64,000 bases of DNA from Octopus sinensis. Its lineage: Eukaryota. A program made the position numbers and the translations under genes. Every line of letters begins with the position of its first letter. The first letter of the stretch is position 1. Positions 1,905 through 52,130 of this stretch are shown piece after piece. The stretch covers positions 16,120,001 through 16,184,000 of the forward strand of contig NC_043018.1 in assembly GCF_006345805.1 (NCBI RefSeq), given 5' to 3'. The notes beneath the pieces were generated by a model that saw only the letters and a list, made by a program, of their open reading frames with translations, made no database searches and was not told where the DNA came from.

Positions 1905-2125
1905 TAACCCCATAAGTTTACCATTAATTCCATGAAATATTGATGGGTCCCACTAGTTAGTGTGTGTGTGTGTGTGTAGGGTTATTCAAAAAGAATGAAC
2001 CGATTTCAATCAGCAGATCACAATCCACTGAGTCATTCGCTGTTGTAGGATTCTTTTTTATTGTGGGGATGTGTAAAAAATTGTGTTAATGTTCCACCGC
2101 CACCCATTAACCTCGATGGCCTTAA

Positions 2126-2346
2126 CCCTTTAGCATTTAAACCGGCCATATCCGGCCAAAAGTATTCTGCCTGTTTTATGTTCAAACTAGCCAGATCTGG
2201 TCTCTCACACCAACCCTACAATATCATCTTAAAAATGAACAGCTACCGCATCAAAATCTCATAGCTACAAGATAAGGCATGATTAGTTCAAAGCAATGTG
2301 GATAAAAAAGCATTAATTTTGGCAGAATAATGTGAACACTAAAGGG
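2126..2346. mobile_element. piggyBac-type MITE (family D); further copies at 9038-9258, about 38660-39055, 40080-40300 and elsewhere
   Basis: TTAA on both sides (2122-2125, 2347-2350) and CCCTTTAG...CTAAAGGG terminal inverted repeats; near-identical copy at 9038-9258 also flanked by TTAA. Confidence 0.75.
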
Positions 2347-2592
2347 TTAAACATCAAATAACAGCAGTATCAACTCAGTGGATCGTGGATATGCTGGTAT
2401 GTGTCTGGGAGGAATTCTTTTATCGCAATGATTGTTGCCCATGCTGCAGGTGGTGGTGGCCACATTGAACACTTGTAAGACAGGAAATAAAAGTTGATTG
2501 TGAGTAAATACTTGTGACTTCGCTGGAGTTCTCTATTGCTTTTCCTTATTAAAATATTGCGTAATGTCATCAGTTCATTCAGTCTGAATAAC

Positions 2593-2626
<34 letters not shown>

Positions 2627-2683
2627 ATCATATATGTACATTTTGTTTCAGTCATTTGACTGTGGCCACACTGGAGCACCATG

Positions 2684-3035
2684 TACATGATCTCATTCTC
2701 GCCCACAAGATCATAAGCGGAAAGTGTAACCTCTCGAAAGAGCTGTTCTTCACTCCTGCTCCAGAGCGTCGGCTGCGGGGTCATTCCGAAAAGCTCTACC
2801 TGCGACGATTTCATCTCAATCGAAGGAGAGGAGCTTTCTCCGTCCGGGTTGCGGATCCGTGGAACAAGCTGCCAGACGAGATGGTGAAGATGCCGACGAC
2901 CGCTTTGTTCAAAGACTCCCTTGACCTCAAGTGGCCTGAACTCTTTACATGAACACCACCCTGTACTTAACTCCATGTCCCCCTACATGGCCTTGCTATT
3001 TGCTTTTGAGCCAAATTAACTAACTAACTAACTAT
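2684..3035 (+). mobile_element. 5-prime-truncated CR1-type LINE, ORF2 C-terminus and 3-prime tail
   Basis: Reads DLILAHKIISG...RLRGHSEKL...FSVRVADPWNKLP...FKDSLD, typical of the CR1 ORF2 C-terminus; stop at 2952, then a (TAAC)n tail. Confidence 0.8.
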
Positions 3036-4308
3036 CTCTAAAACAAAATTTTTCTTCAAGAACTTAACAAATAATGTATATTAGATAAAATATTTTTCAG
3101 TGGACAACTTGACTCCTCTCATGACCAATTCAAAAGTTATTTCTGCCAGTTCCTAAGAGCTTAAAAGGTAAATAAGAACAGTGAACTTCCTGATTGCCAT
3201 TCTTTCTAATAATTACTATCACATGTATGTCCAGGTGACTGGTATACTCATGTTGGTGAGGTGATCACAGCACCTATGTGCCCAGCTAACCATGCTACCT
3301 GTATGTCCGGCTGGTCACAACACCTGTAAAATCAAGCTCATCATAACACCTGTATGTGCAGCTAATTCATCCTATCTTTGATGATACCATCTTCTTTGAT
3401 AATTTCATTCTCTCTGATAACACCTGTATCCACACCTAACCATGCTACCTCTAAATCCAGCTGATCACCACACCTGTATCCACATCTAATCAAGCTACCT
3501 CTACATCCAGCCAATCACGACAGTTGTGGTCATGACACCTGCAAGTAATTATCTATTTTTCTTCATCATCTTTCTCAATGTTTCTTTAGTGAATAACTCA
3601 GGTGTTTTCTACAGCAACCACACACACACCAATAGAAACTGAGTGAAGCCTGAATCAATTAAAATTCATTAATAGACACAGAGGGAGATGGGTTAATAAC
3701 AACTGTGATTAATTAATTAATTCATTTAGCAAAAGCAGGCTAAATTGTTAAAAGGGGTTAGAAGGGAGGAGAGATGAAGAGGGAGGGGTGGGGGAAGTTG
3801 ATTGGAGCCACCCAAGCACATTACCAGTACTTACAAAATTAAAAAAACAAAAAAACATTTACCGCTCCCTTCCTCTTACACTTTTCTTTCCTCTTCCTCC
3901 TTCCCTGAGAGGCACCTCTACCCCCCACTCTCCATCAGTGCCAATAATAATAATAATAATAGAAATTCTTTCCACCATAGGCAGAGGACCTGGAATTTTG
4001 ATGGAAAGGGGGGTTGGGAAGGAGGAGGGGGGGCAGTCAATTACAGTACCCAACTGGTACTAACTTTGTCAACCCCCTTAACGATGAAAGGTGGAGCTGT
4101 CCTCAACAGAATTTCAACTCGCAAATTTCAAAGAGCCAAAAATTATGCCACAAGGCATTTATCTCACATTCTAAGGGTTCTGCCAGTTTCTCACCTTGGG
4201 ATAAAAATAATTTTCAAAAGGAAGAATATACATATATACAGGTTTATATAAAAACAGAATTATTATTAATTATTATTATTAACATTATTATTATTAATAT
4301 TATTGTTA

Positions 4309-4667: not shown

Positions 4668-5049
4668 CTGCAACAAGAACAAGTCAATGGTATTAGACAA
4701 TTACTGCATGACCTATCAGACAAACTGACCCCCAAGGCCAGATCTGACGGGGTTGAAGTCTTCCCCCGACCAACTTCAGATTTCTAAACGAAACTTTATA
4801 TAAGCATGGCTGTGTGGTTAAGAAGCTGGACTTCCAACCAAAGGATTTGTAGTTCATTCCAAATAAGCAGCACTTTGAGGAAACAGCCTACTGTGCTTTC
4901 AGGACAACCAATACCTTGAGAATGAATTTGGTAGATGGAAACTGTGTGGAAGCCTGTTGTGTGTGTGTATACATGGACACACATGTATATATACATATAT
5001 GTATACATACATACACATATGTATATGTACATACACATATATGTATGTG

Positions 5050-5355: not shown

Positions 5356-5659
5356 GATACATGTATATGTTACATATGCATGGTTTAGTGGTTAAGGTGC
5401 TGCACTCATGACTGTAAGATCGTGGGTTCGATTCCCAGACCGGGTATTGCATTGTATTCTTGGGCAAAGCACTTCATTTCACATTGCGATTATTTTGACA
5501 CCTGACATGTGGCACCTGTACAGGTAATATCGATCTGATGGCAGGAGTGAGCTTATCTCTACACAAACATTTGATCACTACAAACAAATCATGTGTTGTT
5601 GCTCGGTAAGAAACTGTCATACCCTCATGTCATCTAACGACGGGAGAGTCCGTCATATG

Positions 5660-5721
<62 letters not shown>

Positions 5722-6073
5722 GTTGTTCAGAAAATTCTGTCCAATTCTTCGGAAAAATTTTTTCAAATTTGATTTTTGAGGTGTTATTTTCGTAGAGTTT
5801 TTAGACGTAATTTTGCATGCTTAATAATTTATTTGTACACTTCAATAATTTTATATTGATTTCTTTCAGACTATAATTTTGAAATCCTTAATTTCAAACA
5901 TGAAAAAATAAATGCTTTTACTTTTTTTTTTACATGAATTTAAATGCCAGAGGATTAATGCTGCTATTCTTCCCCCAACTATATCAAGCCTCACCACCAC
6001 TACTACCCTTACAATTGCCTGTGCTGCCACCACCACCAGGTCAATTCCTAAAATGGTAAGGAGAGAGACTGAC

Positions 6074-6170
6074 CTTCCAGTTCCATTACTTCCATTCTCT
6101 TTCCATCTTCGCTCCGACCCCAGAACATCATTCCATGTTTCTCTAATTCTTCAACGTAATCTGGGTTAAC
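6074..6170 (-). CDS. CTPS: CTP synthase, coding exon 14 (VNPDYVEELEKHGMMFWGRSEDGKRMEVMELE)
   Basis: 97 bp, AG/GT ends, homologous to the CTPS GATase segment VNP...RMEIVELE. Confidence 0.95.
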
Positions 6171-6472
6171 CTGGAAAAGACATGAAGAAAATGTGAAAAT
6201 ATTTGTAGAAGGAGACTGTTCTGAAGCAGATCGTGTGTGTGTGTGTGTGTGTGTGTAGGTATGGGTATGCAGTTAAATATTTCACTTTGCAAGCACATGG
6301 TTCTACAGCTTCAGTCCCAGTGTCTTCCATTGCCCCAGGCCCACCAATGTGAACCCAGTAAGGGAATTTGGCACATAGAGACTGTGTGGAAGCCCATCAT
6401 GTATGCAAGCGAGTGCGAACATGTAGGTGAGTGAGTGAGAACGTGTATGCAAGATTGAGAACATGTATGCAA

Positions 6473-6511
<39 letters not shown>

Positions 6512-7093
6512 TTTGAAAGGTGTGGAAAAGTGGACGTTAAAATAATGAAAACATTATGTGTGGGGGCAGCCCTGCATCTTCTCCACAGCAAGACACTTGA
6601 TTTCTGACCGTTTCTCATAGCTTAACCTCTCATCACTTGACACAAATCACTTCCCCCCCCCCCAATACTAGACCCCTTCTCTCATTTGAGAGTATCTTTG
6701 TCTTGCCAGTTACCAGGTGACCTCACAGGTGCGACATAAAAAGTACCCAGTGCACTGTGATGTGGTAAGCATTATAAAGAGCGTCCGGCTGTAAAAAAAC
6801 CATTCCTAAGAATACAGCACAGCAGAGCTCAGCGCAGTCTTCTGGCAGGTCAGCTCTGGTCAAATCATGCAATCTATGACAGCATGGAAAACAGACAGGT
6901 GCTTGTGAACATGAGTGTCACCTGACTCGTGCTAGGATAGAGAAATGCACATTAAAACAATATACACACACACACACACACACAGTGTATATGTGTGTGC
7001 GTGAAGAAAATAATGTTATTTTATTCCACACAGGTAGAAATATAGGAAAAATGGAAGTTGAAAATGCATTGAGAATAGTTAAAATTATATAAG

Positions 7094-7474
7094 ACTAGCA
7101 GTATCGCCCGGCGTTGCTCGGGTTTGTAAGGGAAATAACTATAAAGCATTTTTAGAGAGTTATAGCCAAAAAATGGAAAAAAAATTATGGTAAATTTTTT
7201 TTTTTAGTTAAAAAGGTCGAGTTGCGTCCCCTAAACAGTCTGTGGTTTGTGTTTCTGATTCTCGACCCCATGTCGAATTAATCGATTTTTTTCAGAACTG
7301 GGGGAACTTTTCAAAATTTTCGCTGCGTTAGTTTTGAATTATGACATTGGGCTGTGTGTGTGTGTGTGTCAAGTTTCATCAGAATCGGTTGAAAGCCGTG
7401 GTCAGGGTGAGGGTACAACCTGACAGACACACAGAAACACACACAGACAAACTGCCGTTTATATAGAGAGAGAT
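7094..7474 (+). mobile_element. Non-autonomous Helitron/Helentron-like element; copies at 29619-29980 (-), 43084-43658 (+, interrupted) and 18893-19090 (partial)
   Basis: ACTAG start, subterminal hairpin CCCGGCGTTGCTCGGG, TTTATATAGAGAG end, near-identical dispersed copies, no TSD seen. Confidence 0.6.
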
Positions 7475-7532
7475 TTAACCGGTTTCAGTTTACACTGATT
7501 TTCAAAAGGTTGAAGGTTCAAATGGTACTTAC

Positions 7533-7588
7533 TTCATAGCGATGCCGGTGACGTTCTTCAACAAAATCAACATCTCCATATAATTTCT
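7533..7588 (-). CDS. CTPS: CTP synthase, coding exon 13 (KLYGDVDFVEERHRHRYE)
   Basis: 56 bp, ERHRHRYE signature, AG/GTAAGT ends. Confidence 0.97.
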
Positions 7589-8242
7589 CTGAAGAAAAAG
7601 AGAGATTATTAAACATTATCATCTGCTGGAGTCATAGCTCTTTCGTTATGTTTCTGATGAAATACAGTCGTTATTTAAATTAAATTTGAAAATGAAGAAG
7701 AATTAAGCAGAATCATCATCATCGTTTAACGTCCGTTCTCCATGCTAGTAGCATGGGTTGGACGGTTCGACCGGGGGATCTGGGAAGCCAGAAGGCTGCA
7801 CCAGGCTCCAGTCTGATCTGGCAGTTTCTACAGCTGGATGCCCTTCCTAACGCCAACCCAATAACAAGTGTTTATTTTGATGGAAGTTTACACTTTACAC
7901 TTTAGCATCCAAATTACTATCAAATGTAAAGCCTATTTATTCACACCGCGACAACAACACACACACCCACACGTTTCAAACCTGGTACTTATCCCATTGG
8001 TCTCTTTTGCCGAATCACTACGCTGAGGGGGTGGGTGGGTGGGTGCAAACACACCAACACCGGTTGTCAAGCAGTGTGGTGAGGCTGGGACACACACGTT
8101 CAAATACTCGCACAAGCGGCAGCCTTTGTTCAGTCAGTTTCCATCAACTCAGAAGACTTTGGTCATCCCGAGACTATTGTAAAAGACACTTCTTGCTCAA
8201 GGTGCCATACAGTAGGACTGAACCCAGAACCACAAGGCTGGG

Positions 8243-8296
<54 letters not shown>

Positions 8297-8375
8297 TGAA
8301 GCTTCTACAAAATCTAAACATACACGAATAGTCTGCCACCCGAATGCTATTTTGAGGCTACAGTTGAATTAAAAA

Positions 8376-8590
8376 ATACCAATTTCTTTATTACCCACAA
8401 GGGGCTAAACAAGGACAGACATAGGTATTAAGTCAATTACATTGACTCCAGTGCGTAACTGGTACTTAATTTATCGACCCCGAAAGGATGAAAGGCAAAG
8501 TCGACCATGGCAGAATTTGAACTCACAACGTAACGACGAAATATGGCTGCGCATTTCGCCCGGCGTGCTAACGTTTCTGCCAGCTTGCCG
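8376..8590 (-). mobile_element. tRNA-headed SINE family C (GGCGAGCTGGCAGAAACGTTAGC...TTTCATCCTTTCGGGGTCGATAAA); copies at about 10292-10500, 10522-10735, 15876-16113, 36394-36598, 59235-59480, 62884-63108
   Basis: Multiple dispersed similar copies with a pol III box-like head. Confidence 0.7.
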
Positions 8591-8861
8591 TACCATCACC
8601 ATCATCATCGTTTAACGTCCGCTTTCCATGCTAGCATGGGTTGGACGGTTTCACTGAGGGCTGGCGAACCAGATAACTGCACCAGGCTCCAGTCTTGATC
8701 TGGCAGAGTTTCTGCTATAATGTATCGCCCAATAACCTTTAACGCTACTTAATCACCAATAACAACACATGCTGGTCAAGATTCTTCATTTCCATTGGTC
8801 CTGACCAATGATTGATTGTAGAACTGATTAACAACAACAAAACAGAAAAAAGTCAACTTAC

Positions 8862-8958
8862 TTGTGATTGATTTATTGCTTCTGAAGATCGTTTTCCTTT
8901 TCCCCAGTCGCATTGTTCCTCCTAATTTACCAGGATTGTGCTCCGGCATTTCAATAAC
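8862..8958 (-). CDS. CTPS: CTP synthase, coding exon 12 ([32 protein letters not shown])
   Basis: 97 bp, GGTMRLG signature, AG/GTAAGT ends. Confidence 0.97.
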
Positions 8959-9524
8959 CTTAAATAAGATAAAGAATCATATGGTAACAAACTGTAGGAC
9001 ATCATTACTAAATAATGATCAACCCATTAGTGTTTAACCCTTTAGCATTTAAACCGGCCATATCCGGCCAAAAGTATTCTGCCTGTTTTATGTTCAAACT
9101 GGCCATATCTGGTCTCTCACACCAACCCTACAATCTCATCTTAAAAATTAACAGCTACCTCATCAAAATCTCATAGCTACAAGATAATGCATGATTAGTT
9201 CAAAACATTGTGGATAAAAAAGGATCAATTTTGGCAGAATAATGCGAACACTAAAGGGTTAAACTGGCCACATCCGGCCCCTATGTTCCAGCTGTTTTAT
9301 GTTCAAACTGACCTTACCCAGCCTCTTAGACCTACCCCTAAAATGTCCTAAAACTAAAACAAAACCATTGAAGTGTTAATGCTACAAGATAATGCATGAT
9401 TAATTCAAGGCAATATGAATAAATAATAAGCAATACATTTGACAGAAAATTCTTAATGCTAAAAGGTTTAAGAACTCAGCATCATTACTAAATGATCAAA
9501 GAATTTTATGGCATCATTACCCAA

Positions 9525-9835
9525 TAATCATCATCATCATCGTTTAACATCCGTTCTCCACGCTAGCACGGGTTGGATGGTTCGACCGGGGTCTGGGAAG
9601 CCAGAAGGCTGCACCAGGCTCCAGTCTGATCTGGCAGATTTTCTACAGCTGGATGCCCTTCCTAACGCCAACCACTCCGCGAGTGTAGTGGGTGCTTTTT
9701 ACGTGCCACCTGCACAGGTGCCAGGAGGGTCCGGCATCGGCCACGATCGGTTGGAGCTTTTAACGTGCCACCAGCACGGGAGCCAACAACGGCCACGTTC
9801 GGATGGTGATTTTTATGTGCCACCAGCACAGGTAT
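9525..9835 (-). mobile_element. (GAT)n-tailed retroposon family B (GGCGTTAGGAAGGGCATCCAGC core); more than 12 copies, e.g. 14825-15189, 20345-20650, 30255-30580, 32985-33300, 43156-43342, 47481-47799, 49560-49830, 60667-60987
   Basis: Dispersed, variably 5-prime-truncated copies ending in GTTAAACGATGATGATG; internal tandem subrepeats of about 58 bp in variable number. Confidence 0.75.
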
Positions 9836-10293: not shown

Positions 10294-10975
10294 GGCAGTG
10301 AAATGGCAGAATTGTTAGCACGCTGGACGAAATCCTTAGCAGTATTTCGCCTGTCACTGCATTCAGAGTTCAAATTCCACTAAGGTCAACTTTGACTTTC
10401 ATCACTTTGGGGTCAATAAATGAAGTACCAGTGAAACAGTGGGGTTTATATAGTCAACTAGTGCCCTCCCCCATATTTCAGGCCTAGAGCCTTTAGTAAA
10501 AAGGATTATTATTATTATTATTAAGGCAGCGAACTGGCAGAATCTTTACCATGCTGGACGAAATGCTTAACAGTATTTCGCCCATCGCTGCGTTTGAGGT
10601 TCAAAATTCCATTGAGGTCAGTTTTGCTTTTCGTCCTTTCTGGGTCGATAAATTAAGTACCAGTGAAACACTGAGGTCAATGAAATTGACAAGACCCTTC
10701 GCACCAAATTTCAGGTCTTGAACCTTTAGTAGAAAGGGTTATTAATATTAATAGAAAGGTGAAGGCAGCAAGCTGCCATGCGGGGCAAAATGCTCTGTGG
10801 CATCTCACCTGTTTTCGCAGGGTTCAAATGCCACCTTTTATCTTTCTGGGGTTGATAAAAAAAAAAAAAAAAAAAAAAAAGGACCAGCTGAGATTTGTAG
10901 GGTATGTGTAAGACTGGCTGTGGGGTATGCGTAAAAAGAAACTGTAATGTGAAGTAATTTGGGGAGTCAACCTAC

Positions 10976-11082: not shown

Positions 11083-12220
11083 CTGAAATGAAATTGAGGA
11101 GATGAATAAAATATTAACATTCTGCATTTGCTCAACACAAAACGGTTTTCTCATCACAACACTTACACAATTGGGTCCATACATGTATATGCATGGGCAA
11201 AAATGCATTCTGTTCCTTTATTCCAAAGTTAAGGTTTTTACTTCATTGCTACATGGGCTCCCACAAACACACACTCTTTTACATGTTCCAGTCATTTGAC
11301 TGTGGCCATGCTGGAGCACAGCCTTTAGTCGAAGAAATTGGGCCCCCAAGACTTATTCTTTGTAAGCTTAGTACTTATTTTATCAATCTCGTTTGTCCAA
11401 CTGCTAAGCTTTGGGGTCATAAACACACCAACATCAGTTACCAAGCAATGGTATTGGGGAACAAACACATACAAATATATATATATACACACACACATAC
11501 ACACGATGGGCTTCTTTCAGATTCCATCTACCAAATCCACTTACAAGGCTGTAGAAGACACTTGCTCACACTGGTGCATGTACTCAATGTAGTTCTCAGG
11601 AAGATTCTACCTGACATTGAATTTGACATGGTTGGCCCATCTGAATTACTACTCATTTTTGTCAGATGAGTGGACTGGAGCAACGTGAAATAAAGTGTCT
11701 TGCTCAAGGACACACCACGCTGTTGGGAATAAATCTCAATCTTATGATCATGAACCAAATGTCCACCAAACATTAAGCCACGGGTTTTCCACGTATATAC
11801 ACATATACAACCCGAGAAAGGACAGCAGGGGAGACAACTAGAGAGTAAGACTCAGTGGGAGGAAACAATCTGACAGAAAGGAGGAAGGAGGAGAGGACTG
11901 GAGAGCAAGAGGCAGCAGGAGACAATCTGATGGAAAGGAGATGGGAGATGACCAGGGTGGGAAGACATGACCAGAGAAAGAGAGGCTGAGGGAGGAGACA
12001 AACAGTGCAAGAGGCAGAGGGAGGAGACAACCTGAGAGCGAGAGGCAGAGGGAGATAACCTGAGAAAACCCAGTGGGAGGAGACAACTGAGAGCAAGAGG
12101 TGGTGGGTGGAGACGACCTGAGAGTGAGAGGTGGCAAGAGGAGACAACCAGAGAGCAAAATGCAGAGAGAGGAGGCTGGAAGGTGGGGAGTAGTAGAATA
12201 ACCTAAGATGATTTACATAC

Positions 12221-25547: not shown

Positions 25548-26259
25548 TGTCCCCCTAGCATTGCTTGACAACCGATGCTGGCGTGTTTATGTCCCCGTAA
25601 CTTAGCGGTTCGGCAAAAGGGACCGATAGAATAAGTACTGGGCTTACAAAACGAATAAGTCCCGGGGTCGAGTTGCTCGATTAAAGGCAGTGCTCCAGCA
25701 TGGCCACAGTCAAACGACTGAAACAAGTAGAAGAGTAAACCAAGCCAGGCCAAGCCATGGAACTTGGTGTGGCCCCAGGCCTTGCCAATCCCTGTCAAAG
25801 CTGTCCAAACTATGTCAGTATGCAAAACGGATGTTAGATGTTGATGATGATGTTCCGATGGGGTGGTCGTGTGGTTAAGAAGTTTACCTCCCGACCACAT
25901 GGTTTCAGGTTCAGTCCTATTTCACAGCACCTCAGGCAACTATTGACCAAAGCTTTGTAAGCGGGTTTGATAGAAAGAAACAGAAGAAAACTTCTGTGTG
26001 TGTGTGTGTGTGTGTGTCTTGTCTCCACGTGGCATGATAGTTGTAAACAAGTGCCATCGTTATGCAAGCAGTGTGATTCAATTCCCAATATTCTTGAGAC
26101 ACATGCATGTGCACACACACACTCTCTCACACAGAGAGGCTTCCTTCAGTTTCTTCCTATCAAGCCCAACTCACAAGGCTTTGGCCAACAGTTGCCCAAG
26201 ATGCAGCAAAATGAGAGAGGTGGGGAGCACAGGCAGGCAGAAAAGCAATAACAACATAC

Positions 26260-26360
26260 CTCGATAATACAAACATCAGGTTCTGCTTTGTCTTCACTGA
26301 CAGGAATTTTGGCAACTCTTTCAACCCATTCTTGGATGGCATCTGTTATGTGGGGGACAA
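26260..26360 (-). CDS. CTPS: CTP synthase, coding exon 3 ([34 protein letters not shown])
   Basis: 101 bp, [11 protein letters not shown] motif, AG/GTATGT ends. Confidence 0.97.
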
Positions 26361-28059
26361 CTGAAAGAGTAAGACAGAATTCACAGACTTAAGAAGACCA
26401 GATGTTGGGGGGGAAAAAAAAGAAAAGGAAGTTCAGAAAAATGGTGGCAGAACAAACAAGAGATTCACAAAAGGAAGGACAGCGAAGAATTAGAGAGGGA
26501 CATTTAGTTGATAGCATCAATTTGAGTACTTGACTGGTATTTTTACCTATTAACCCCAGAAGGACGAAGACATATGTGAAATTAGACCTGAACTAAGAAC
26601 ATCAAATATAGTAAGGCATTTTTTCCAAGGTTCTAAAGATTCTTAGTTAATTCATCACCCTGATGATGGTCGTGGAGGCTTTACAGTCAAACTGACCGCA
26701 TCCTGCCTCTCATGCATAACATACAATGCCATTCTAAAACTAAGCAATCACATCATCGAAGCCACAAAGCTGTGAGATAATGCAGGATTAATTCAAAACC
26801 ATGTGAATAGAGGCATAGCTGTGCAGTAAGAAGCTTGCTTCCCAACCACATGGTTCTGGGTTCAGTCCCACTGCATGGCACCTTGGGCAAGTGTCTTCTG
26901 CTATAGCTTCAGGTTGACCAAACCTTGTTAGTGGATTTGGTAGACGGAAACTGAATGAAGCCAGTCGTATATACATAGGTGTGTGTGTGTGTGTTTGTCC
27001 CCCCCACCATAGCTTGACAACCAATGTTGGTATACCCCCCCACTATAGCTTGTCTCTCACCATAGCTTGACAACCGGTGTTATGTTCCTGTAACATAGCA
27101 ATTCACGTACACACACACAATTCATAGAGAGAGAATGACAGAATGACACACAGACACACACCCACGTCCATACATGTGCACACACATTCTCACTCTGCCC
27201 CCACCCCCACTCCACCACACACAAAGCAACAGAACGACACAAAAATAGACATACACACACACACACTCATACACGTGCACACAGACCCATACGTTTTACT
27301 CACCTACTCATTTCCACTGTCCACACACACTTCAGACTACACACATGCATCCACACACCCTTCAGACAACATAGTTACAATGTGAACCTCTAAATCACAT
27401 GGCCATACTTGCACTTACATAAATAGGGGTTTTTTTGGAGGGGGTTTAACTATCACTCCATTTCTTTAGTTAAAGGTTTTTCCTTGAGACTACTTCAAAA
27501 CTGGAAGTTTGAACCAGGGAACCAGGAGCAATTGTGGGGTGGGGTTCGGAGGCCTGAGGTAACCCAACATGAACTAAAGATCGATCTTCAACCGATGTAA
27601 CCCAAATGACAATCACAGATTTGACCCTTTAACATTCAGATTACTGTCAAATGCTCTGCATATTCATTCACATTGTTTTCAATTAACTATGCAGATAGCT
27701 CACAGCTTGCGAGATTCCGATGACTGTTTCTGATGTGAATGACATTGTCAGGTAGGTGTGAAAGGTCAGACTTGGCAGGTTTGAACATTTTGGGCTAGAT
27801 AAGGCAGGTTTCAATGCTAAAGACATCCTGCATTATCTCAGATCTGATGTAACCGTTCAGTTTTTAGGACACTAGGGTAGATGTAAGAGGCTGGGTCTGG
27901 CCGGTTTGAACATAAAACACAATATTTTGGCCAGATATGGTTGGTCCGAGTGCTAACGGTTTAACTGTCTAGCATTCAGATTATTCTGTCAAGTGCGATG
28001 CTTATCCATGTTGTTTCGAATTAATCATGCATTATCTCAATGCTTTGAGATTTCAAATA

Positions 28060-28479: not shown

Positions 28480-28662
28480 ATTTACTCTTTAGTATTTCAA
28501 GATATCTTTATGTAATTTTGGTTGTTAAAATGTGATTGTTTAGGATTTGAATAACATTGTCAAGTAGGTGTGAAAGGTCAGATCTGGCCAGATTGAATAT
28601 AAGACAGAATATTTGAGCTGGATGTGGCCTGTTAAATGATTCTATCAGATATGTCTGCCATA

Positions 28663-28737
28663 TGATGTGACTCAGTACAAATTTGTCTTCAGATATCAGA
28701 ATACGTTCACTGGTATAAAGTCATCACTGTCACATCA
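28663..28737 (-). ncRNA. Intronic box C/D snoRNA candidate, copy 1
   Basis: 9-bp perfect terminal stem TGATGTGAC/GTCACATCA, box C GTGATGA, D-prime CTGA, C-prime TGAAGA, box D CTGA; same strand as CTPS; paralog at 42395-42464. Confidence 0.8.
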
Positions 28738-29211
28738 CGTCTCTGGTTCCTGCTAGAGACACACAGCAGAAATATTGATAAAAAATAAAAACAGGGGAGT
28801 TTTAAGTGCAACTCTGTCAACACAATGCAACATAGCTTTAAAAAAAAAAAACCATTATACAATATAGTTTATTGTTTTGTCATTTGTGTGTGCGTATGTC
28901 TTTCAACACAGAGACAAGGTAACACAAGCTTTAAAAAAGACTTTCACAATAATTATAGGGAGCTGCTGTTGTAGCTGAGAGAAAAATTCCAAGAGAGATA
29001 GAGTGTGTGTGTGTGTGTGTGTGTGTGTATGAGTGAAAGATAGGTAGTGTTGTCACCATAGTAACTATTTATACTTTCACCATATAACAGTCTGTAGAAA
29101 CAATGTACATGCATGATTAACAAATATTTTTACTGGCAGTGTAGCGACAGGTAAAGACCAAGCCGTCCATTTCAATTGCATACATTGATTAAACAATCAA
29201 CCGGTTTCTAC

Positions 29212-29382
29212 CTTGCACAGTTTTCCCTAAATAATCTCCAGTGCGTTCTCTGTTTATAACTTGCTGGTATATCTTTCCAGTCGTTATGTTGTTGTCCCTG
29301 TGAAGGGTGATGTTGAGGAATCGTTCATAGTTGCCCAAGTCAAGATCAACCTCACCGCCATCGTCCAAGACAAACACTTCAC
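29212..29382 (-). CDS. CTPS: CTP synthase, coding exon 2 ([22 protein letters not shown]...GDYLGKTVQ)
   Basis: 171 bp, [10 protein letters not shown] signature, AG/GT ends. Confidence 0.98.
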
Positions 29383-31315
29383 CTGAATTAAGAAAAAAAA
29401 AACAGAGAATTAAGAAAGGTCATTATGGCATTGTTGCATTTATTATGTTCTGTGAAATGGGAAGAAACAGACAGTGTTGTTCAGATACAAGACAAATGTT
29501 TGGTGCTTACCGGCTTTCAAAGAAAGCAATTCAAACCCCTGTCATATATCACATTTTTTTGTTTTTTTAGAAAAAAGATATCACTCCATATCTTTTTTCT
29601 AAAAAAAAAAAAGATGTAATCTCTCTCTATATAAACGGCAGTTTGTCTGTGTGTGTTTCTGTGTGTCTGTTAGGTTGTACCCTCACCCTGACCACGGCTT
29701 TCAACCGATTCTGATGAAACTTGACACACACATAGCCCAATGTCATAATTCAAAACTAACGCAACGAAAATTTTGAAAAGTTCCCCCAGTTCTGAAAAAA
29801 ATCGATTAATTCGACATGGGGTCGAGAATCAGAAACACAAACCACAGACTGTCTAGGGGACGCAACCCCACCTTTTTAACTCTCAAAAAAATTTAACCAT
29901 TTTTTTGGCTATAACTCTCTAAAAATGCTTTATAGTTATTTCCCTTACAAACCCGAGCAACGCCGGGCGATACTGCTAGTATACACTAAAAGATCAACAC
30001 TAATCCATTTAAAAATTAATCTCCTTTAGACACAAGGCTAGAAATTGAGCGAAAGGGGCTAGAATGGACCCCAGTACTTGACTGATTAATTTATTGATCC
30101 CTAAAAAGGATGAGAGGCAAAGCTTTTCTCGACAAAATTTGAACTCAGAATAGAAAGAGTCAGAAACATTGACACAAAGAATTTTGTCCAGCATGCTAAC
30201 GAGTCTGCTTACTCATCAACTACATTAATCAATAATGAAGTTGATGACATATACTCATCATCATCGTTTAACATCCGCTTTCCATGCTAGCATGGGTTGG
30301 ACGGTTCAACTGGGGTCTGGCAAGCTCGAAGGCTGCACCAGGCCAGTCAGATCTGGCAGTGTTTCTACAGCTGGATGCCCTTCCTAACGCCAACCACTCT
30401 AAGAGTGTAGTGGGTGCTTTTATGTGCCACTGACACAGGTGCCAGGCGAGGCTGGCAGACGGATGGTGTTTTTTATGTGCCACCGACACAGGTGCCAGAC
30501 GAGGCTGGCGAACGGCCACGCTCGGATGGTGTTTGTTACGTGCCCTCAGCACGGAGGCCAGTCAATGCGGTACTGGCTAACTGTTAAGGAAAAAAAAAAC
30601 GAAAAAAAAGAGTGGCCGTGTGGCAAGAAGCTTGCTTTTCAACCACATGGTTCCAGGTTCAGTCCCACTCCGTGACACCTTGGGCAAGTATCTACTATAG
30701 CCTCAAGCCAATCAAAGCCTTGTGAGTGGATGCGGTAGACGGAAACTGAATGAAGCTCAGCATAGATGTATGTACATCGCAAATTATGGATAATCATGAA
30801 AGGTTTTTTTTAATTGGTTAACAACAAATTTCCATGGCAACCTAACAGAAAGGCCAATAAAATAGGTGAAGTGACAAGATATCATTGAAATTAATGGGCA
30901 TTGACCTCGTTATCTTATCAGTTGTCATGAGACATTTTGCAATCAGAGCTTAAACCCTTTTAAAACACACCTGAACGAGACCTTTGGTTCTATAATACAA
31001 ACTTCCTGCTTTAACCCTTGAGTTTTTAAACCAGTCATATCAAGCTAATAATATATTATCTGTTTTAGGTTCAAACTGGCCAGATCCAACCTCTCACACC
31101 TATCCTACAATGTCATTCTATAAATATACAATCACAAAGCTATGAGATAATGCCCGACTCATTCAAAATGTTATGAATAAATAAGCATTACATTTGACAG
31201 GGTAAAGGATTAAGGGTTTCAGCCATACTAATCAACCCCAGGACTTTTTTTTTTTTCTTAAAGCCTAGTACTAATTCTATTAGGACAAAGTTATTTCAAT
31301 AATTCTTCGTTATTT

Positions 31316-37801: not shown

Positions 37802-39681
37802 TACACAGACACACACAAACTTGGCTGCTGCTAAAATATTCCAACATATATCTTTAGCTGCATCTGCCTGTAATCTCAGACACATGTCAACTAGATTATC
37901 CAGTCAAGTCCCTCTGTTTACACAGTAATGCGTAAATAGTATATTGATTTTTTTAGAACAATGCAGATAGTTGGAGTACCACTGCCAAGAAGGCAGTACC
38001 ATAACGGTACCAATACAAAAGCATCAAGCTGTTAAACAGATGGCCAGACAAAAACAGACAGCTTTCGCTTTTAGGCTGGAGAGACAAAGTCAGCTTTATT
38101 GGATGGCTGCTGAAGTTGCAGTATCAATGGACTGGCATCGTTTAACAGAGCTTCGACTGGCCAGGTCAAGGTCAGATCACGGCCAGACGTTTCTTCAGCA
38201 ATGGCCATCGGTATTTAAACCCATGGTCAATGCAAGATCTGCCTTGATTGATAACCTGTGATATATGTTTAGTTAGCAACCGCAGCAGATGGGGGTCAAA
38301 TTAGCAACAAACTAATGGTGGCCATAACGAGTTTCCACTCATTAAGGGCCAGTATATAAAGCTAGCTTCCAGGTATTTAAGGGCCAATATATATTATATA
38401 TATATATATTATATCTATAAAATAATATGTTACAATTACTCAATAGTCTTCAGCATGACAGAAAGTGACAAAGCAGGCCCTTTGAAATACAGGTACAACA
38501 GAAACAGGAAGAAAGAGTGAAACAAAGTTGTGGTGAAAGAGTACAGCAGGGTTCACCACCAACCCCTGCTGGAGCCCAGTGGAGTTTTGAGTTTCAGATG
38601 CCGAAGTGGAAATCCCCAACACCAAAAGGGGTTTCCACTTCGGCATCTGAAACTCTAGAATTTCAACTGGTTGTATCCAGTCTAAATGTTCAGCTTGTTT
38701 TGTGTTCAACCCAGCCAGATCCAGTCTTTCGCACCAAATCTCAAAAGCTACGAGATAATACTGGATTAATTCAAAACAATGTGAATAAAGAAGCATTAGA
38801 TTTGACAGATTACTGAATGCTAAAGGGTTCACCTATCAGCATTTAAACTAGCCATATCTGGCCAAAATACTCTACCTGTTTTATGATCAAACTGACCAGG
38901 TCTAGCCTCTCACACCCATCCAGCCATGTCATTCTAAAACTAATCAATCACATCATTGAAATCTCGTAGCTATGGGATAATGCAGGATTAATTCAAAACA
39001 ATGTGAATAAATAAGTATTAGATTTGACACAGATTACTGAATGCTAAAGGGTTAAACCAGCCATAACCAGTCCAAACATCGTACCTGTTTAAAATGTTCA
39101 AACCAACCAGATCTGGGCTGACACCCATACTGCGATGTTATTCCAAAAATAAACAATAGGTGCAGGAGTGACTGTGTGGTAAGTAGCTTGCTAACCAACC
39201 ACATGGTTCCGGGTTCAGTCCCACTGCGTGGCATCTTGGGCAAGTGTCTTCTGCTATAGCCCTAGGCCGACCAATGCCTTGTGAGTGGATTTGGTAGACG
39301 GAAACTGAAAGAAGCCTGTCGTATATATGTTTGTGTGTGTGTGTGTCTGTTTGTCCCCGTAGCATTGCTTGACAACTGATGCTGGTGTGTTTACGTCCCC
39401 GTCACTTAGCAGATCGGCAAAAGAGACCGATAGAATAAGTACTGGGCTTTCAAAAAGAATAAGTCCCGGGGTCGATTTGCTCGACTAAAGGCGGTGCTCC
39501 AGCATGGCCGCAGTCAAATGACTGAAACAAGTAAGAGAGTAAAGAGTAACCACATCACTGAAATCTCGTAGGTACAAGATAATGCATAATTAATTGAGAA
39601 CAATTTAATTAAATAAGCGTTTCGTTTGAGTGATACGAATGCTTAAAAGGTTAAAACATAATAATCAGAATAGTTACGTAC

Positions 39682-39847
39682 CGTGTTCATAAGGAGAGAA
39701 AGTTCCGGCATCAATGTTAATGTAAGGATCAATCTTAATCGATGTCACTTTTATATTGCATGCCTTCAACAGAGTTCCGATGCTGCTGGCAATGACCCCT
39801 TTACCAAGACCACTAATCACACCGCCTGTCACAAGAATGTACTTCAT
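39682..39847 (-). CDS. CTPS: CTP synthase, coding exon 1 ([24 protein letters not shown]...[16 protein letters not shown])
   Basis: ATG at 39847, 166 coding bp, P-loop-like [10 protein letters not shown]; donor GTACGT; upstream acceptor ccatctccag at 39881 gives 33 nt of 5-prime UTR (39848-39880). Confidence 0.98.
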
Positions 39848-40424
39848 AATGTGATTTGGCCTAACACAATGTCTGATGTTCTGGAGATGGAAAAGAAAAA
39901 GGAAGAAAAAATAAAATATTGTACATGAAAATATACAACTATCATCATTATTTTAATTTTTAGCATTTAAACTGGCCAAATTTGGAGAAAATATTCTACC
40001 TGTTTCAGATCAAATTAACTATAATAATTAGCAGGCTTCAAAAATAATGGAGTCAATTCATTCGACTAAAAGTTTAACCCTTTATTTAGTGTTCAGATTA
40101 TTCAATCAAACATAATGCTTATTGATTCCCATTGATTTGAATTCATCATGCATTATCTCATATCTTCAAGATCTTGATGGTGTAATTACTTAATGTAGAA
40201 TAACATTGTAGGGTAGGTGTGAGGGCCTGGATCTGGTCAGTTTGAACATAAAACAGATTAACTATTTTGGCCGGATATGGCCGGTTTAAATACTAAAGGG
40301 TTAAGGCAGTGCCCCAGCATAGCCGCAGTCTAATAGCCTGGTGCAGCCTCCTGGCTTCCCAGACCCCAGTCGAACTGTTCAGCCCATGGAAATCAGATGT
40401 TAAACGATGATGATATATATATAT

Positions 40425-41395
40425 TGTTATGAGTAGGTCAATTCAAGGACAGTGCTTGCAACCGACTTTTTGTGAGCTGGCGTCAAGCAGGCGAGTAAAT
40501 CCTTTGTCCCGTCAGATTCTGGAGAGAGTGATGGCTTTTGGGGAGACCTTCGACCCTTTTCAGGTGAAAGAAAGTTTGAGGAAGCACCCCTTTAAAAAGC
40601 AGGAGATATGAGTCTGTTACACAGTTGGGGACAGAGCGAGTTAGTGACAGGTGGTTCTGCCGGAGACAGTGAATGTGAAAGAGGCAGACAGGCAGAGAGG
40701 ATTAAGGAGCTGAGAAGGAACTGGGAGAGATTGCGGCGAGAGGGCATGGCCATTGCGGTAGTAGTTTCTGAAATTGTTGCAGACTGGAAAGAACATTCGG
40801 TAAAGTTTTGTTTGTGTCTTTTGGTTGTTGTATTTTGATGTGTTAAAAAAAAAAGAGAAAGAAGGAAAGAGGAAACAGAAAGAACAGTGCTAAAGAGAAA
40901 AAGAAATAAAATTGTAAAGCCATTGTGAAAAGAGTTGTTGAAAAGAAAGAAAGGAAGGAGAGAGACTAATGTATCGTTAATGTGAACTGTATCGTTAACT
41001 GTATCGTTAATGTGAACATTATGTTTTGATGGCTTTGACGGTCTGTATTGTGCATGCCTTTGATTGTAACAGAACGACGTGAACTGTTTAAATGCTTTGA
41101 TTTTGTTGCTTGTATTTTCTTTAATGTACCTGCTATGAATCACATTTCATTTTATGTTGTAATAATTGTATAAACTGTTCTTAAATGTAAGCTACTGCCT
41201 TCTTCTGTATCTCTTCCTGTTGTTGTTGCTATCTCCGGTCGCCGGGTTCGCTGCCGCCTTCCCCCACCGAATTCTCTCTCTCCCCGAGTCCGTGGCGAGT
41301 GCGCCGATCGATCAGGCCGGTAAATCGTCGTCGCTCGACTTGGTAGGGTCCCGGGTTTTCCGAAGAGTTTGAGCGACGGCAGGTGGTTCGTAACA
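40425..41395. mobile_element. Solo LTR (probably Gypsy-type), 971 bp
   Basis: TG...CA ends with imperfect inverted termini TGTTATGA/TCGTAACA and a 4-bp ATAT duplication (40421-40424, 41396-41399); no internal gag/pol. Confidence 0.7.
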
Positions 41396-42394: not shown

Positions 42395-42464
42395 TGTGAC
42401 TCAGAATAAAACATTTCTTCAGTAATCAGAATACGTTCACTGATTAAAGATCATCATTGTCACA
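42395..42464 (-). ncRNA. Box C/D snoRNA candidate, copy 2
   Basis: Stem TGTGAC/GTCACA, box C ATGATGA, guide CAGTGAACGTATT identical to copy 1 before D-prime CTGA, C-prime TGAAGA, box D CTGA. Confidence 0.8.
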
Positions 42465-43669: not shown

Positions 43670-45815
43670 AGCGGTTGGGAGGCAGTTGCCGGCAACCGTG
43701 GAGAATGGCGATGTACAGTAAAAGAGGGAATACAAAAGAGTGACAGCAACCGTGGAAAATGGTGACGTACAGTAAAAGAGGGAATACAAAAGAGTGACAG
43801 CAACCGTGGAGAATGGTGACGTACAGGAGAAGAGGGAATACAAAAAGTGACAGCAACCGTGGAGAATGGTGACGTACAGTAAAAGAGGGAATACAAAAGA
43901 GTGACAGCAACCGTGGAAAATGGTGACGTACAGTAAAAGAGGGAATACAAAAGAGTGACAGCAACCGTGGAGAATGGTGACGTACAGTAAAAGAGGGAAT
44001 ACAAAAGAGTGACAGCAACCGTGGAGAATGGTGACGTACAGGAGAAGAGGGAATACAAAAGAGTGACAGCAACCGTGGAGAATGGTGACGTACAGTAAAA
44101 GAGGGAATACAAAAGAGTGACAGCAACCGTGGAAAATGGTGACGTACAGTAAAAGAGGAATACAAAAGAGTGACAGCAACCGTGGAGAATGGTGACGTAC
44201 AGTAAAAGAGGGAATACAAAAGAGTGACAGCAACCGTGGAGAATGGTGGACGTACAGTAAAAGAGGGAATACAAAAGAGTGACAGCAACCGTGGAAAATG
44301 GTGACGTACAGTAAAAGAGGGAATACAAAAGAGTGACAGCAACCGTGAGAATGGTGACGTACAGTAAAAGAGGGAATACAAAAGAGTGACAGCAACCGTG
44401 GAGAATGGTGACGTACAGGAGAAGAGGGAATACAAAAGAGTGACAGCAACCGTGGAGAATGGTGACGTACAGTAAAAGAGGGAATACAAAAGAGTGACAG
44501 CAACCGTGGAAAATGGTGACGTACAGTAAAAGAGGGAATACAAAAGAGTGACAGCAACCGTGGAGAATGGTGACGTACAGTAAAAGAGGGAATACAAAAG
44601 AGTGACAGCAACCGTGGAGAATGGTGACGTACAGTAAAAGAGGGAATACAAAAGAGTGACAGCAACCGTGGAAAATGGTGACGTACAGTAAAAGAGGGAA
44701 TACAAAAGAGTGACAGCAACCGTGGAGAATGGTGACGTACAGTAAAAGAGGAATACAAAAGAGTGACAGCAACCGTGGAGAATGGTGACGTACAGTAAAA
44801 GAGGGAATACAAAAGAATGACAGCAACCGTGGAGAATGGTGACGTACAGTAAAAGAGGGAATACAAAAGAGTGACAGCAACCGTGGAGAATGGTGACGTA
44901 CAGGAGAAGAGGGAATACAAAAGAGTGACAGCAACCGTGGAGAATGGTGACGTACAGTAAAAGAGGGAATACAAAAGAGTGACAGCAACCGTGGAGAATG
45001 GCGACGTACAGGAGAAGAGGGAATACAAAAGAGTGACAGCAACCGTGGAGAATGGCGACGTACAGTAAAAGAGGGAATACAAAAGAGTGACAGCAACCGT
45101 GGAGAATGGTGACGTACAGTAAAAGAGGGAATACAAAAGAGTGACAGCAACCGTGGAGAATGGTGACGTACAGGAGAAGAGGGAATACAAAAGAGTGACA
45201 GCAACCGTGGAGAATGGTGACGTACAGTAAAAGAGGAATACAAAAGAGTGACAGCAACCGTGGAGAATGGTGACGTACAGGAGAAGAGGGAATACAAAAG
45301 AGTGACAGCAACCGTGGAGAATGGCGACGTACAGTAAAAGAGGGAATACAAAAGAGTGACAGCAACCGTGGAGAATGGTGACGTACAGGAGAAGAGGGAA
45401 TACAAAAGAGTGACAGCAACCGTGGAGAATGGCGACGTACAGTAAAAGAGGGAATACAAAAGAGTGACAGCAACCGTGGAGAATGGTGACGTACAGGAGA
45501 AGAGGGAATACAAAAGAGTGACAGCAACCGTGGAGAATGGTGACGTACAGTAAAAGAGGGAATACAAAAGAGTGACAGAGGGAGAGAGGAGAAATGGAAA
45601 GAAAGGAAGAGACGTAAACAAGAGACTATGGCACTACAACCAGCCAGGAACAGTCTTCGCTACATTTGCGGTACCTGCCAGAGGGAGTGTTTGTCCAGGA
45701 TAGGACTACACAGCCACAGCAGGAAATGTATTAGGACATGAAATATAAAAGCCGGACTAGACTACAAAAAAAAAAAAAAACATGCACAACCTCCCGAGAC
45801 AGAAAGGATGCCAAT
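43670..45815 (+). mobile_element. 5-prime-truncated RTE-clade LINE 3-prime end with internally amplified ORF2 segment
   Basis: Flanks read SGWEAVAGNRGEWR-TVKEGIQKSD...RGREEKWKERKRRK...YICGTCQRECLSRIGLHSHSRKC-stop (45739-45741), then a CTCCCGAGACAGAAAGGATGCC 3-prime end. Confidence 0.8.
43692..45577. repeat. Minisatellite, about 35 x 54 bp
   Basis: Unit GCAACCGTGGAGAATGGTGACGTACAGTAAAAGAGGGAATACAAAAGAGTGACA with a few recurrent variants. Confidence 0.97.
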
Positions 45816-51734: not shown

Positions 51735-51907
51735 GAAACAGGCGAGAGAGAGGAGAGAGGAGAGAGAGAGAAAGAGAGAAAGAGAGAGAGAAGAGAGAGA
51801 AAGAGAGAGAGAAGAGAGAGAAAGAGAGAGAGAGAGAAGAGAGAGAGAAGAGAGAGAGAGAGAAGAGAGAGAAGAGAGAGAGAAGAGAGAGAGAAGAGAG
51901 AGAGAGA

Positions 51908-51941
<34 letters not shown>

Positions 51942-52130
51942 AGAGAGAGAGAGGAGAGAGAAGAGAGAGAGAGAGAGAAGAGAGGACAGAGAGAGGAGAG
52001 AGAAGAGAGGACAGAGAGAGGAGAGAGAAGAGAGGACAGAGAGAGGAGAGAGAAGAGAGAAGAGAGAGAAGAGAGAAGGAAGAGAGAAGAGAGAGATAAA
52101 GAAAAGAAGAGAAAAGCGTGGAGAAGAAAC
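51735..52130. repeat. About 400-bp near-pure polypurine (GA/GAA/GGA) microsatellite tract
   Basis: Almost only A and G on the + strand. Confidence 0.95.

What the first reader, a model, noticed from the sequence alone, without database searches (positions are those of the whole stretch)
28663..28737. Box C/D snoRNA hosted in a CTPS intron, with no confidently assigned target
It has a complete C/D-prime/C-prime/D architecture closed by a 9-bp perfect stem. Compared with its paralog at 42395, the boxes, the stem and the 13-nt guide CAGUGAACGUAUU upstream of D-prime are conserved, while the D-box guide has diverged. That pattern is expected if the D-prime guide is functional. The predicted target is 5-AAUACGUUCACUG-3, with the +5 rule placing methylation on the C of ACG. 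From memory, the nearest rRNA match is the 18S segment ACGUUUACU (9 bp with one G-U; equivalent to human 18S C797). The match is partial, so the RNA may follow a diverged cephalopod rRNA or be an orphan guide.
Basis: partly seen in the sequence, partly recalled or inferred. Interest (0 to 1): 0.75.

Follow-up and report, generated by a model that had tools for sequence, protein, structure and literature searches.

The report
Octopus snoRNA guiding 18S methylation
This is a genuine but ordinary box C/D small nucleolar RNA, sitting in an intron of the CTP synthase gene of an octopus, and its conserved guide matches this animal's own 18S ribosomal RNA at the spot that is 2'-O-methylated in humans (C797), so it is not an orphan.

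Summary
On the minus strand, 28737-28663 encodes a 75-nt box C/D RNA: a 9-bp terminal stem, C GUGAUGA, D' CUGA, C' UGAAGA and D CUGA. The genome holds one paralog, at 42464-42395. My motif scan found only these two loci in the window (0.07 expected by chance).

Copy A lies sense-oriented in the intron between coding exons 2 and 3 of a minus-strand CTP synthase gene. Argonauta hians has an ortholog in the same intron, with a compensatory change in the stem. Boxes and stem are 93-100% conserved and the 13-nt D' guide 92-100%. The D guide is only 23-46% conserved.

The "missing" target is the species' own 18S rRNA. It reads GGUACGUUCACUG, which gives 13 bp with the guide (11 Watson-Crick, 2 G-U, no mismatch). 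The +5 rule places methylation on the C homologous to human 18S Cm797. In humans an unrelated-looking snoRNA, ZL107/Z39 in a COX7C intron, guides that site from its D box.

Three guide positions differ between human and octopus, and each change matches a change in the 18S.

This is a new, unannotated member of a known class. Still open: expression, actual methylation, the host of copy B, and a G-to-A change at the methylation-pairing nucleotide of the Argonauta guide.

The parts
28663..28737 (-). Copy A: complete 75-nt box C/D snoRNA
   Evidence: Sequence read. It is one of only two C/D-architecture hits in the window. Sub-threshold generic C/D Rfam matches span exactly this interval.
28729..28737 (-). 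Copy A 5' half of the terminal stem (UGAUGUGAC)
   Evidence: Pairs perfectly over 9 bp with 28671-28663. The stem is present in the MFE and centroid folds. There is a compensatory A-U to G-C change relative to Argonauta.
28721..28727 (-). Copy A C box GUGAUGA
   Evidence: UGAUGA is invariant in all three homologs.
28700..28712 (-). Copy A D' guide CAGUGAACGUAUU. The G at 28704 is the 5th nt upstream of D'.
   Evidence: Identical in copy B and 12/13 in Argonauta. Gives a 13-bp duplex (11 WC + 2 GU) with the species' own 18S rRNA.
28696..28699 (-). Copy A D' box CUGA
   Evidence: Invariant in all three homologs.
28686..28691 (-). Copy A C' box UGAAGA (one departure from UGAUGA)
   Evidence: Invariant in all three homologs.
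28676..28685 (-). Copy A D-box spacer CAAAUUUGUA (10 nt), probably not a working guide
   Evidence: Only 23-46% conserved between homologs. No rRNA duplex longer than 8 bp.
28672..28675 (-). Copy A D box CUGA
   Evidence: Invariant.
28663..28671 (-). Copy A 3' half of the terminal stem (GUCACAUCA)
42395..42464 (-). Copy B: paralogous box C/D snoRNA. Stem UGUGAC/GUCACA, C AUGAUGA 42457-42451, guide 42442-42430, D' 42429-42426, C' 42421-42416, D 42404-42401.
   Evidence: 80% identical to copy A over the core.
39680..39880 (-). CTPS ATG-containing exon (ATG at 39847-39845). A polypyrimidine tract plus CAG acceptor ends at 39881, 33 nt upstream of the ATG.
   Evidence: tblastn, sequence.
29213..29383 (-). 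CTPS coding exon 2 (approximate ends), the exon upstream of copy A
   Evidence: tblastn and motif DLDLGNYER.
26251..26370 (-). CTPS coding exon 3 (approximate ends), the exon downstream of copy A
   Evidence: tblastn.

Best explanation
Copy A is an intron-encoded box C/D small nucleolar RNA. It is transcribed as part of the CTP synthase pre-mRNA. After splicing it is released by exonucleolytic trimming of the intron down to the terminal stem and C/D kink-turn, which is protected by the core proteins SNU13, NOP56, NOP58 and fibrillarin. Its D' antisense element CAGUGAACGUAUU pairs with 18S pre-rRNA 5'-GGUACGUUCACUG-3'. Fibrillarin positioned by the C'/D' motif then 2'-O-methylates the C that pairs with the fifth guide nucleotide. 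That C is position about 1296 of this 2.6-kb 18S variant and is homologous to human 18S Cm797. The short, unconserved D-box spacer probably guides nothing. Copy B carries the same guide and is either a redundant second gene or an inactive duplicate. Shown here by computation: the architecture, its rarity, synteny and selective conservation in a second octopod, stem covariation, and unique complementarity to the cognate rRNA at a known methylation site. Inferred, not shown: expression, RNP assembly, and the methylation itself.
For: Architecture and stem. Only two such loci occur in 64 kb, against 0.07 expected, and only two copies occur in the 2.7-Gb genome. The host is CTPS on the same strand, and copy A lies between coding exons 2 and 3. 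Argonauta hians CTPS (90% identical) carries an ortholog in the same intron, at L052 11658-11731 between exons at 10592-10762 and 11987-12097. Identity by segment: stem plus boxes 93-100%, 13-nt guide 92-100%, rest of the D' spacer 25-50%, D guide 23-46%. Stem covariation: GAUGUGAC/GUCACAUC versus GGUGUGAC/GUCACACC. Target: the guide forms 13 contiguous bp (11 WC + 2 GU at positions 1-2) with the species' 18S at L045 2316-2328. This is the only such site in 18S/5.8S/28S, and it is present in 8 independent 18S copies. The duplex ends exactly where guide conservation ends. Only 0.35% of random 13-mers from the window reach this stringency anywhere in the rRNA. The Rfam SSU model aligns the site to the segment just 5' of the conserved UGAAAAAAUUAGAGUG. 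Human ZL107 is assigned to 18S C797, and its guide CUGUAAACGCUUU|CUGA is complementary to that segment. Human and octopus guides differ at positions 3, 4 and 9, and each difference is matched by a difference in the respective 18S (the human 18S segment is from memory, and is consistent with the ZL107 guide and the Rfam consensus).
Against: There is no expression or RiboMeth-seq evidence. The Argonauta ortholog has A instead of G at guide position 5, the nucleotide that pairs with the methylated C. Unless Argonauta 18S has U there, the guide is mismatched at the critical base, and I could not obtain Argonauta 18S. Copy A lies about 2.3 kb from the 3' splice site, far from the 50-100 nt optimum known for mammalian intronic snoRNAs. 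The long external stem may compensate (inference from published work on intronic snoRNA processing, recalled from memory). C' deviates from consensus by one base. snRNA and tRNA targets could not be screened in this genome.
Confidence: 0.85

Rival explanations
1. It is an orphan box C/D RNA. It is a real snoRNA, but its conserved D' element acts on something other than rRNA (an snRNA, tRNA or mRNA) or has a non-guide role.
For: No Rfam family assignment. The Argonauta guide differs at position 5.
Against: The guide matches the cognate 18S perfectly over exactly the conserved 13 nt, at a site methylated in human. The chance of such a match is about 0.35% even before requiring a known site. Guide and target co-vary between human and octopus at three positions.
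Confidence: 0.05
2. It is a decaying or silent snoRNA copy. The locus is a duplicated or retroposed snoRNA relic that is no longer expressed or assembled, and the working guide for this 18S site is elsewhere.
For: Copy B has only a 6-bp stem and may lie upstream of the CTPS transcription start. The Argonauta guide has a CpG-transition change at the critical base. There are no expression data.
Against: The genome has only these two copies, so there is no 'elsewhere' with recognisable similarity. Copy A has intact boxes, a 9-bp stem, sense orientation in an intron, and syntenic conservation with selective constraint on boxes and guide but not on spacers.
Confidence: 0.08
3. It is a chance constellation of short motifs in AT-rich intron sequence and not an RNA gene.
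For: The individual boxes are only 4-7 nt. The folding energy is not unusual against shuffles (z = -0.7), as is normal for C/D snoRNAs.
Against: 0.07 such constellations are expected per window and none with a stem of at least 8 bp. There is a second copy, an ortholog at the same intron in another genus with stem covariation, and a unique rRNA target.
Confidence: 0.01

Closest known systems
Human ZL107 (= Z39; chicken GGgCD20), the box C/D snoRNA assigned to 18S Cm797 (PMC4053766, PMC5027482)
   Same: Same class of RNA and the same homologous target nucleotide in 18S. The guide cores are alike (G5-C6-A7-A8 ... U10-G11 counted from the box), and the differences track differences in the two 18S sequences. 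Both are intronic in a housekeeping gene.
   Different: The human guide sits upstream of the D box; the octopus guide sits upstream of D'. The host is COX7C in human and CTPS in octopus. Outside the boxes and guide core I saw no similarity by eye (no formal alignment was run), so orthology is unproven and independent origin is possible.
Rfam box C/D families SNORD58, SNORD79, SNORD41, SNORD91 and plant snoR122 (best sub-threshold matches)
   Same: Overall length, terminal stem, and placement of the C, D', C' and D boxes.
   Different: Bit scores are 21-24 against gathering thresholds of 36-51. In the SNORD79 alignment the family's guide segment is left unmatched (a 9-nt gap), and the matched letters fall mostly in the boxes and stem. 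These are generic architecture matches, not membership.
Intron-encoded box C/D snoRNAs of animals in general
   Same: One snoRNA per intron, sense orientation, a housekeeping or growth-related host gene, and a single working guide with a degenerate second spacer.
   Different: It lies far from the 3' splice site (about 2.3 kb in Octopus, about 256 nt in Argonauta) and has an unusually long 9-bp external stem. A second copy lies upstream of the host's coding region.

Membership tests
Box C/D snoRNA (class) | C box RUGAUGA near the 5' end and D box CUGA near the 3' end | tested here: met
   GUGAUGA at 28727-28721 and CUGA at 28675-28672. Both are conserved in copy B and in Argonauta.
Box C/D snoRNA (class) | Terminal stem that brings the C and D boxes together | tested here: met
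   A 9-bp perfect stem in copy A, 6 bp in copy B and 8-9 bp in Argonauta. The stem is present in all centroid folds. One compensatory double change is seen.
Box C/D snoRNA (class) | Internal D' and C' boxes | tested here: met
   CUGA and UGAAGA are separated by 4 nt and are invariant in the three homologs.
Box C/D snoRNA (class) | Antisense element of at least 10 nt abutting D or D', complementary to rRNA/snRNA, with the modified nucleotide opposite position 5 | tested here: met
   13 bp (11 WC + 2 GU) with the species' own 18S. Position 5 is a G-C pair.
Box C/D snoRNA (class) | Stable ~60-90-nt RNA bound by fibrillarin/NOP56/NOP58/SNU13, with a 2'-O-methyl group at the predicted site | not testable with these tools
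   No expression, CLIP or RiboMeth-seq data were available.
ZL107 / Z39 family (vertebrate guide for 18S Cm797) | Targets the nucleotide homologous to human 18S C797 | tested here: met
   The Rfam SSU alignment places the target just 5' of UGAAAAAAUUAGAGUG. The ZL107 guide and its C797 assignment come, and the spacing to that landmark is identical.
ZL107 / Z39 family (vertebrate guide for 18S Cm797) | The guide lies upstream of the D box | tested here: not met
   The octopus guide abuts D'. The ZL107 guide abuts the terminal CUGA.
ZL107 / Z39 family (vertebrate guide for 18S Cm797) | Sequence homology beyond boxes and guide, and a shared host gene (COX7C) | tested here: not met
   The host here is CTPS, versus COX7C for ZL107. 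The Rfam E-value scan returned only generic C/D families. I did not verify whether Rfam holds a Z39 model.
Rfam SNORD58 / SNORD79 / snoR122 | Score at or above the family gathering threshold | tested here: not met
   21.6/42, 23.5/47 and 22.2/36 bits. No hits at gathering.

The most novel reading that the evidence does not exclude
The octopod guide for the C797-equivalent arose independently of the vertebrate ZL107/Z39 guide (D' versus D element, different host gene). On this reading the same 18S methylation is kept by convergent or replaced guides, each tracking its own lineage's divergent 18S sequence. The Argonauta G-to-A change at guide position 5 would then mark either a matched C-to-U change in Argonauta 18S (a Cm-to-Um switch) or the ongoing loss of this modification. 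Either outcome is a natural experiment in snoRNA-rRNA co-evolution.
Probability: 0.3. Interest if true: 0.4.

Novelty: new member of a known kind. Interest (0 to 1): 0.25.

Why it matters
It turns an apparent orphan into a guide with a clear target. It also shows that the methylation guide for the human Cm797 site has a counterpart in octopods, adapted to their divergent 18S sequence. My paper search found no dedicated cephalopod snoRNA annotation. This locus is therefore a clean, testable entry for annotation, and it predicts one specific 2'-O-methylated nucleotide in octopus 18S. Beyond that it is an ordinary housekeeping snoRNA. The only unusual aspects are the D' versus D guide placement relative to vertebrates, the octopod-restricted CTPS hosting, and the Argonauta variant at the critical guide base.

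Tried and rejected
- **Rfam rRNA families on the whole genome:** both calls failed. A multi-locus Rfam call failed.
- **Whole-genome pattern search for the 13-nt target:** uninformative. The counts were below those of the reversed-pattern control.
- **ORF list of the window:** useless for an intron-rich gene. I replaced it with motif and tblastn mapping, using a CTPS sequence recalled from memory purely as a probe.
- **Two significance simulations:** both timed out and were rewritten.
- **Argonauta 18S, indirect route:** I searched the protein collection with a spurious ORF read on the antisense of 18S. It found an unnamed octopod contig (L057, same target sequence) and cuttlefish rDNA-like fragments, but not Argonauta. 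The CTPS locus of Argonauta contains no rDNA fragment.
- **Other mollusc CTPS loci:** no C/D snoRNA in abalone, oyster, limpet or cuttlefish. The chiton protein was not on record.
- **D-box spacers as guides:** rejected, because there is no rRNA duplex beyond 8-11 bp and those are rich in G-U.
- **A neighbouring protein gene as host for copy B:** long ORFs upstream of and around copy B (40.6-63.6 kb) have no Pfam match.
- **Membership in SNORD58, SNORD79 or snoR122:** rejected as sub-threshold.

Full report
**Observation.** The feature reads on the minus strand as 5'-UGAUGUGAC-A-GUGAUGA-CUUUAUACCAGUGAACGUAUU-CUGA-UAU-C-UGAAGA-CAAAUUUGUA-CUGA-GUCACAUCA-3', window 28737 down to 28663. That is a canonical box C/D layout:
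- a 9-bp perfect terminal stem;
- C box GUGAUGA;
- a 21-nt spacer ending at D' CUGA;
- C' UGAAGA, 4 nt further on;
- a 10-nt spacer;
- D box CUGA.

It has a 6-bp stem, C box AUGAUGA, the identical 13 nt CAGUGAACGUAUU before D', the same C', and a different second spacer.

A DNA search of the whole 2.72-Gb assembly found only these two copies, so this is not a dispersed repeat. I also scanned for RUGAUGA followed 45-130 nt later by CUGA, with the two flanked by a stem of at least 6 bp. That scan returned exactly these two loci in the 64 kb, both on the minus strand. Shuffled sequence gave 0.07 hits per window, and none with a stem of at least 8 bp.

**Rfam.** No family reaches its gathering score anywhere in the window. 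With a permissive E-value threshold, about twenty different box C/D families align end to end over precisely 28660-28739 on the minus strand, at 14-24 bits against thresholds of 36-64. In the five alignments shown, the matched letters fall mostly in the boxes and stem. The RNA is recognisably of the class but belongs to no curated family.

- They run from [13 protein letters not shown] at 39847 down to about 4507.
- The assembled protein is 90% identical to CTP synthase 1-like of Argonauta hians and 72-76% identical to those of other molluscs.
- Copy A lies between coding exon 2 (about 29383-29213) and coding exon 3 (about 26370-26251), in the sense orientation. It is about 480 nt from the 5' splice site and about 2.3 kb from the 3' splice site.

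Copy B is different. It lies 2.5 kb upstream of the ATG exon. That exon begins at a textbook polypyrimidine-CAG acceptor 33 nt before the ATG, so a non-coding first exon must exist. However, the strongest CpG-rich patch upstream lies BETWEEN the ATG exon and copy B: about 41.4-41.2 kb, followed by a possible CAG|GUAC donor near 41131. Copy B may therefore lie upstream of the CTPS start. Its host is unresolved.

**Conservation.**
- The Argonauta hians CTPS locus (L052) carries one homolog at 11658-11731 on the gene strand, between coding exons 2 (10592-10762) and 3 (11987-12097). That is the same intron as copy A.
- It reads UGUGACA-AUGAUGA-UAUAAA-CAGUGAACAUAUU-CUGA-UAC-A-UGAAGA-AUAUCUUUCUAUG-CUGA-GUCACA.
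- In the three-way alignment, stem plus C box are 93-100% identical, D', D and the 3' stem core 100%, and the 13-nt guide 92-100%. The 5' part of the D' spacer is 25-50% identical and the D spacer 23-46%.
- The outer stem shows a compensatory double change: GAUGUGAC/GUCACAUC in Octopus and GGUGUGAC/GUCACACC in Argonauta.
- The CTPS loci of a cuttlefish (L058), an abalone (L053), an oyster (L054) and a limpet (L055) contain no comparable element.

In this sampling, the CTPS-hosted gene is confined to octopods.

**Target.** I located rDNA with conserved segments and confirmed one unit with Rfam: L045 holds SSU at 1025-3663, 5.8S at 4806-4964 and LSU at 5438-9773.
- Scanning all sampled rDNA copies with both spacers of both paralogs gave one outstanding result. 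The D' guide pairs with 18S 5'-GGUACGUUCACUG-3' at L045 2316-2328.
- The duplex is 13 contiguous base pairs with no mismatch: 11 Watson-Crick pairs, plus G-U pairs at the two positions next to the box.
- The same 13-mer is present in eight independent 18S copies of this genome and in a Logan contig from an unnamed octopod sample.
- The duplex is exactly as long as the conserved block of the guide.
- Only 0.35% of random 13-mers drawn from the window find a match of this quality anywhere in the 7.1 kb of rRNA.
- By the +5 rule, the modified nucleotide is the C of UAC*G (L045 2320, about position 1296 of this long 18S variant).

**Equivalence to human Cm797.** The Rfam SSU model aligns this stretch to the segment immediately 5' of the universally conserved UGAAAAAAUUAGAGUG.
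- In human 18S the corresponding sequence is GAAGCGUUUACUUUGAAAAAAUUAGAG (from memory).
- RiboMeth-seq work lists SSU-C797 as methylated and assigns it to snoRNA ZL107 (PMC5027482).
- The supplement of PMC4053766 gives ZL107 as a COX7C-intron snoRNA whose D-box guide, CUGUAAACGCUUU|CUGA, is complementary to exactly that segment.
- The distance from the modified C to the UGAAAAAA landmark is the same in both species.

Setting the human and octopus guide-target pairs side by side shows three positions (3, 4 and 9 from the box) where both the guide and the 18S differ and pairing is preserved. A cuttlefish rDNA-like fragment reads AGUACGUUCACUUUGAAAAAAUUGGAGUG, so the UACGUUCAC version of the site appears to be a coleoid trait.

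**Mechanism.** I infer the standard pathway (recalled from memory).
- Copy A is excised from the CTPS intron by exonucleases after splicing and debranching.
- It is protected by SNU13/NOP58/NOP56/fibrillarin assembled on the C/D and C'/D' kink-turns.
- The unusually long external stem may help assembly, given the large distance to the branch point.
- The D' element then directs fibrillarin to 2'-O-methylate the C797-equivalent of 18S.

The second spacer is short, unconserved and without a credible rRNA partner, so I take it to be non-functional. Expression, RNP formation and the methyl group itself are not shown here.

**Open points.**
- The Argonauta guide has A where Octopus has G at position 5, the base opposite the modified C. 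This is a CpG transition. If Argonauta 18S has U there, it is a striking compensatory change. If it has C, the Argonauta guide is compromised. I could not obtain Argonauta 18S.
- The host and activity of copy B are unknown.
- By sequence, the Argonauta RNA is closer to copy B (79%) than to copy A (72%), although it shares copy A's position. The order of duplication is unclear.
- snRNA and tRNA targets were not screened.

**Comparison and verdict.** Functionally this RNA is the counterpart of vertebrate ZL107/Z39. However, it uses the D' rather than the D element, sits in a different host gene, and shows no evident similarity beyond boxes and guide core. I do not file it as a member of that family. 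It is a new, unannotated member of the box C/D snoRNA class with a confidently predicted and conventional target. That makes it useful for annotation and it gives a sharp experimental prediction, but it would not surprise a specialist.

Noticed in passing
L052 11680-11692 (Argonauta hians CTPS intron): The orthologous snoRNA guide reads CAGUGAACAUAUU. It has A instead of G at the position that pairs with the methylated C, and the change is a CpG transition. This is either compensated by a C-to-U change in Argonauta 18S or it disables the guide.
   Followed up: partly
window 43692-45578: A minisatellite of 35 copies of a 54-bp unit (96% matches). It is purine-rich on the + strand and leaves all three minus-strand frames open for about 2 kb. 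It starts about 1.2 kb beyond copy B, on the side away from the CTPS coding exons.
   Followed up: partly
window 51744-52096: An imperfect (GA)n microsatellite of about 350 bp.
   Followed up: no
window 41210-41390 (minus strand): A CpG-rich patch (observed/expected 1.2-1.3, against a window median of 0.54), followed by a possible CAG|GUAC donor near 41131. It is a candidate CTPS promoter and first non-coding exon. If so, copy B lies upstream of the gene's start.
   Followed up: partly
window 47797-47644, 36770-36603, 30409-30266, 43342-43190, 35395-35259, 50737-50609, 33214-33156; L052 5684-5983, 8054-8116, 9103-9263, 10930-11072: An interspersed repeat of about 150 nt, in both orientations, shared at 70-88% identity between the Octopus and Argonauta CTPS regions. 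It looks SINE-like.
   Followed up: no
G000 rDNA copies (e.g. L045 = C11589:28500-38499; L051 = C12776:42500-52499): 18S- and 28S-like sequences are scattered over many chromosomes and small contigs. The 18S is unusually long (2.2-2.6 kb), and variants differ by an indel of about 407 nt (L045 versus L051/L033).
   Followed up: partly
L056 4001-5784 and proteins P0122, P0123, P0137: Several annotated Acanthosepion pharaonis 'proteins', one of them named SRRM2, align to the translated antisense strand of the octopus 18S; for P0122 the DNA (L056) confirms rDNA-like sequence. They are likely annotation artefacts. L056 is a truncated rDNA-like fragment inside a 1.47-Mb contig.
   Followed up: partly
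L058 (Acanthosepion pharaonis CTPS), L053 (Haliotis), L054 (Magallana), L055 (Lottia): No box C/D snoRNA occurs in any CTPS intron of these species. Hosting of this snoRNA in CTPS appears restricted to octopods.
   Followed up: yes
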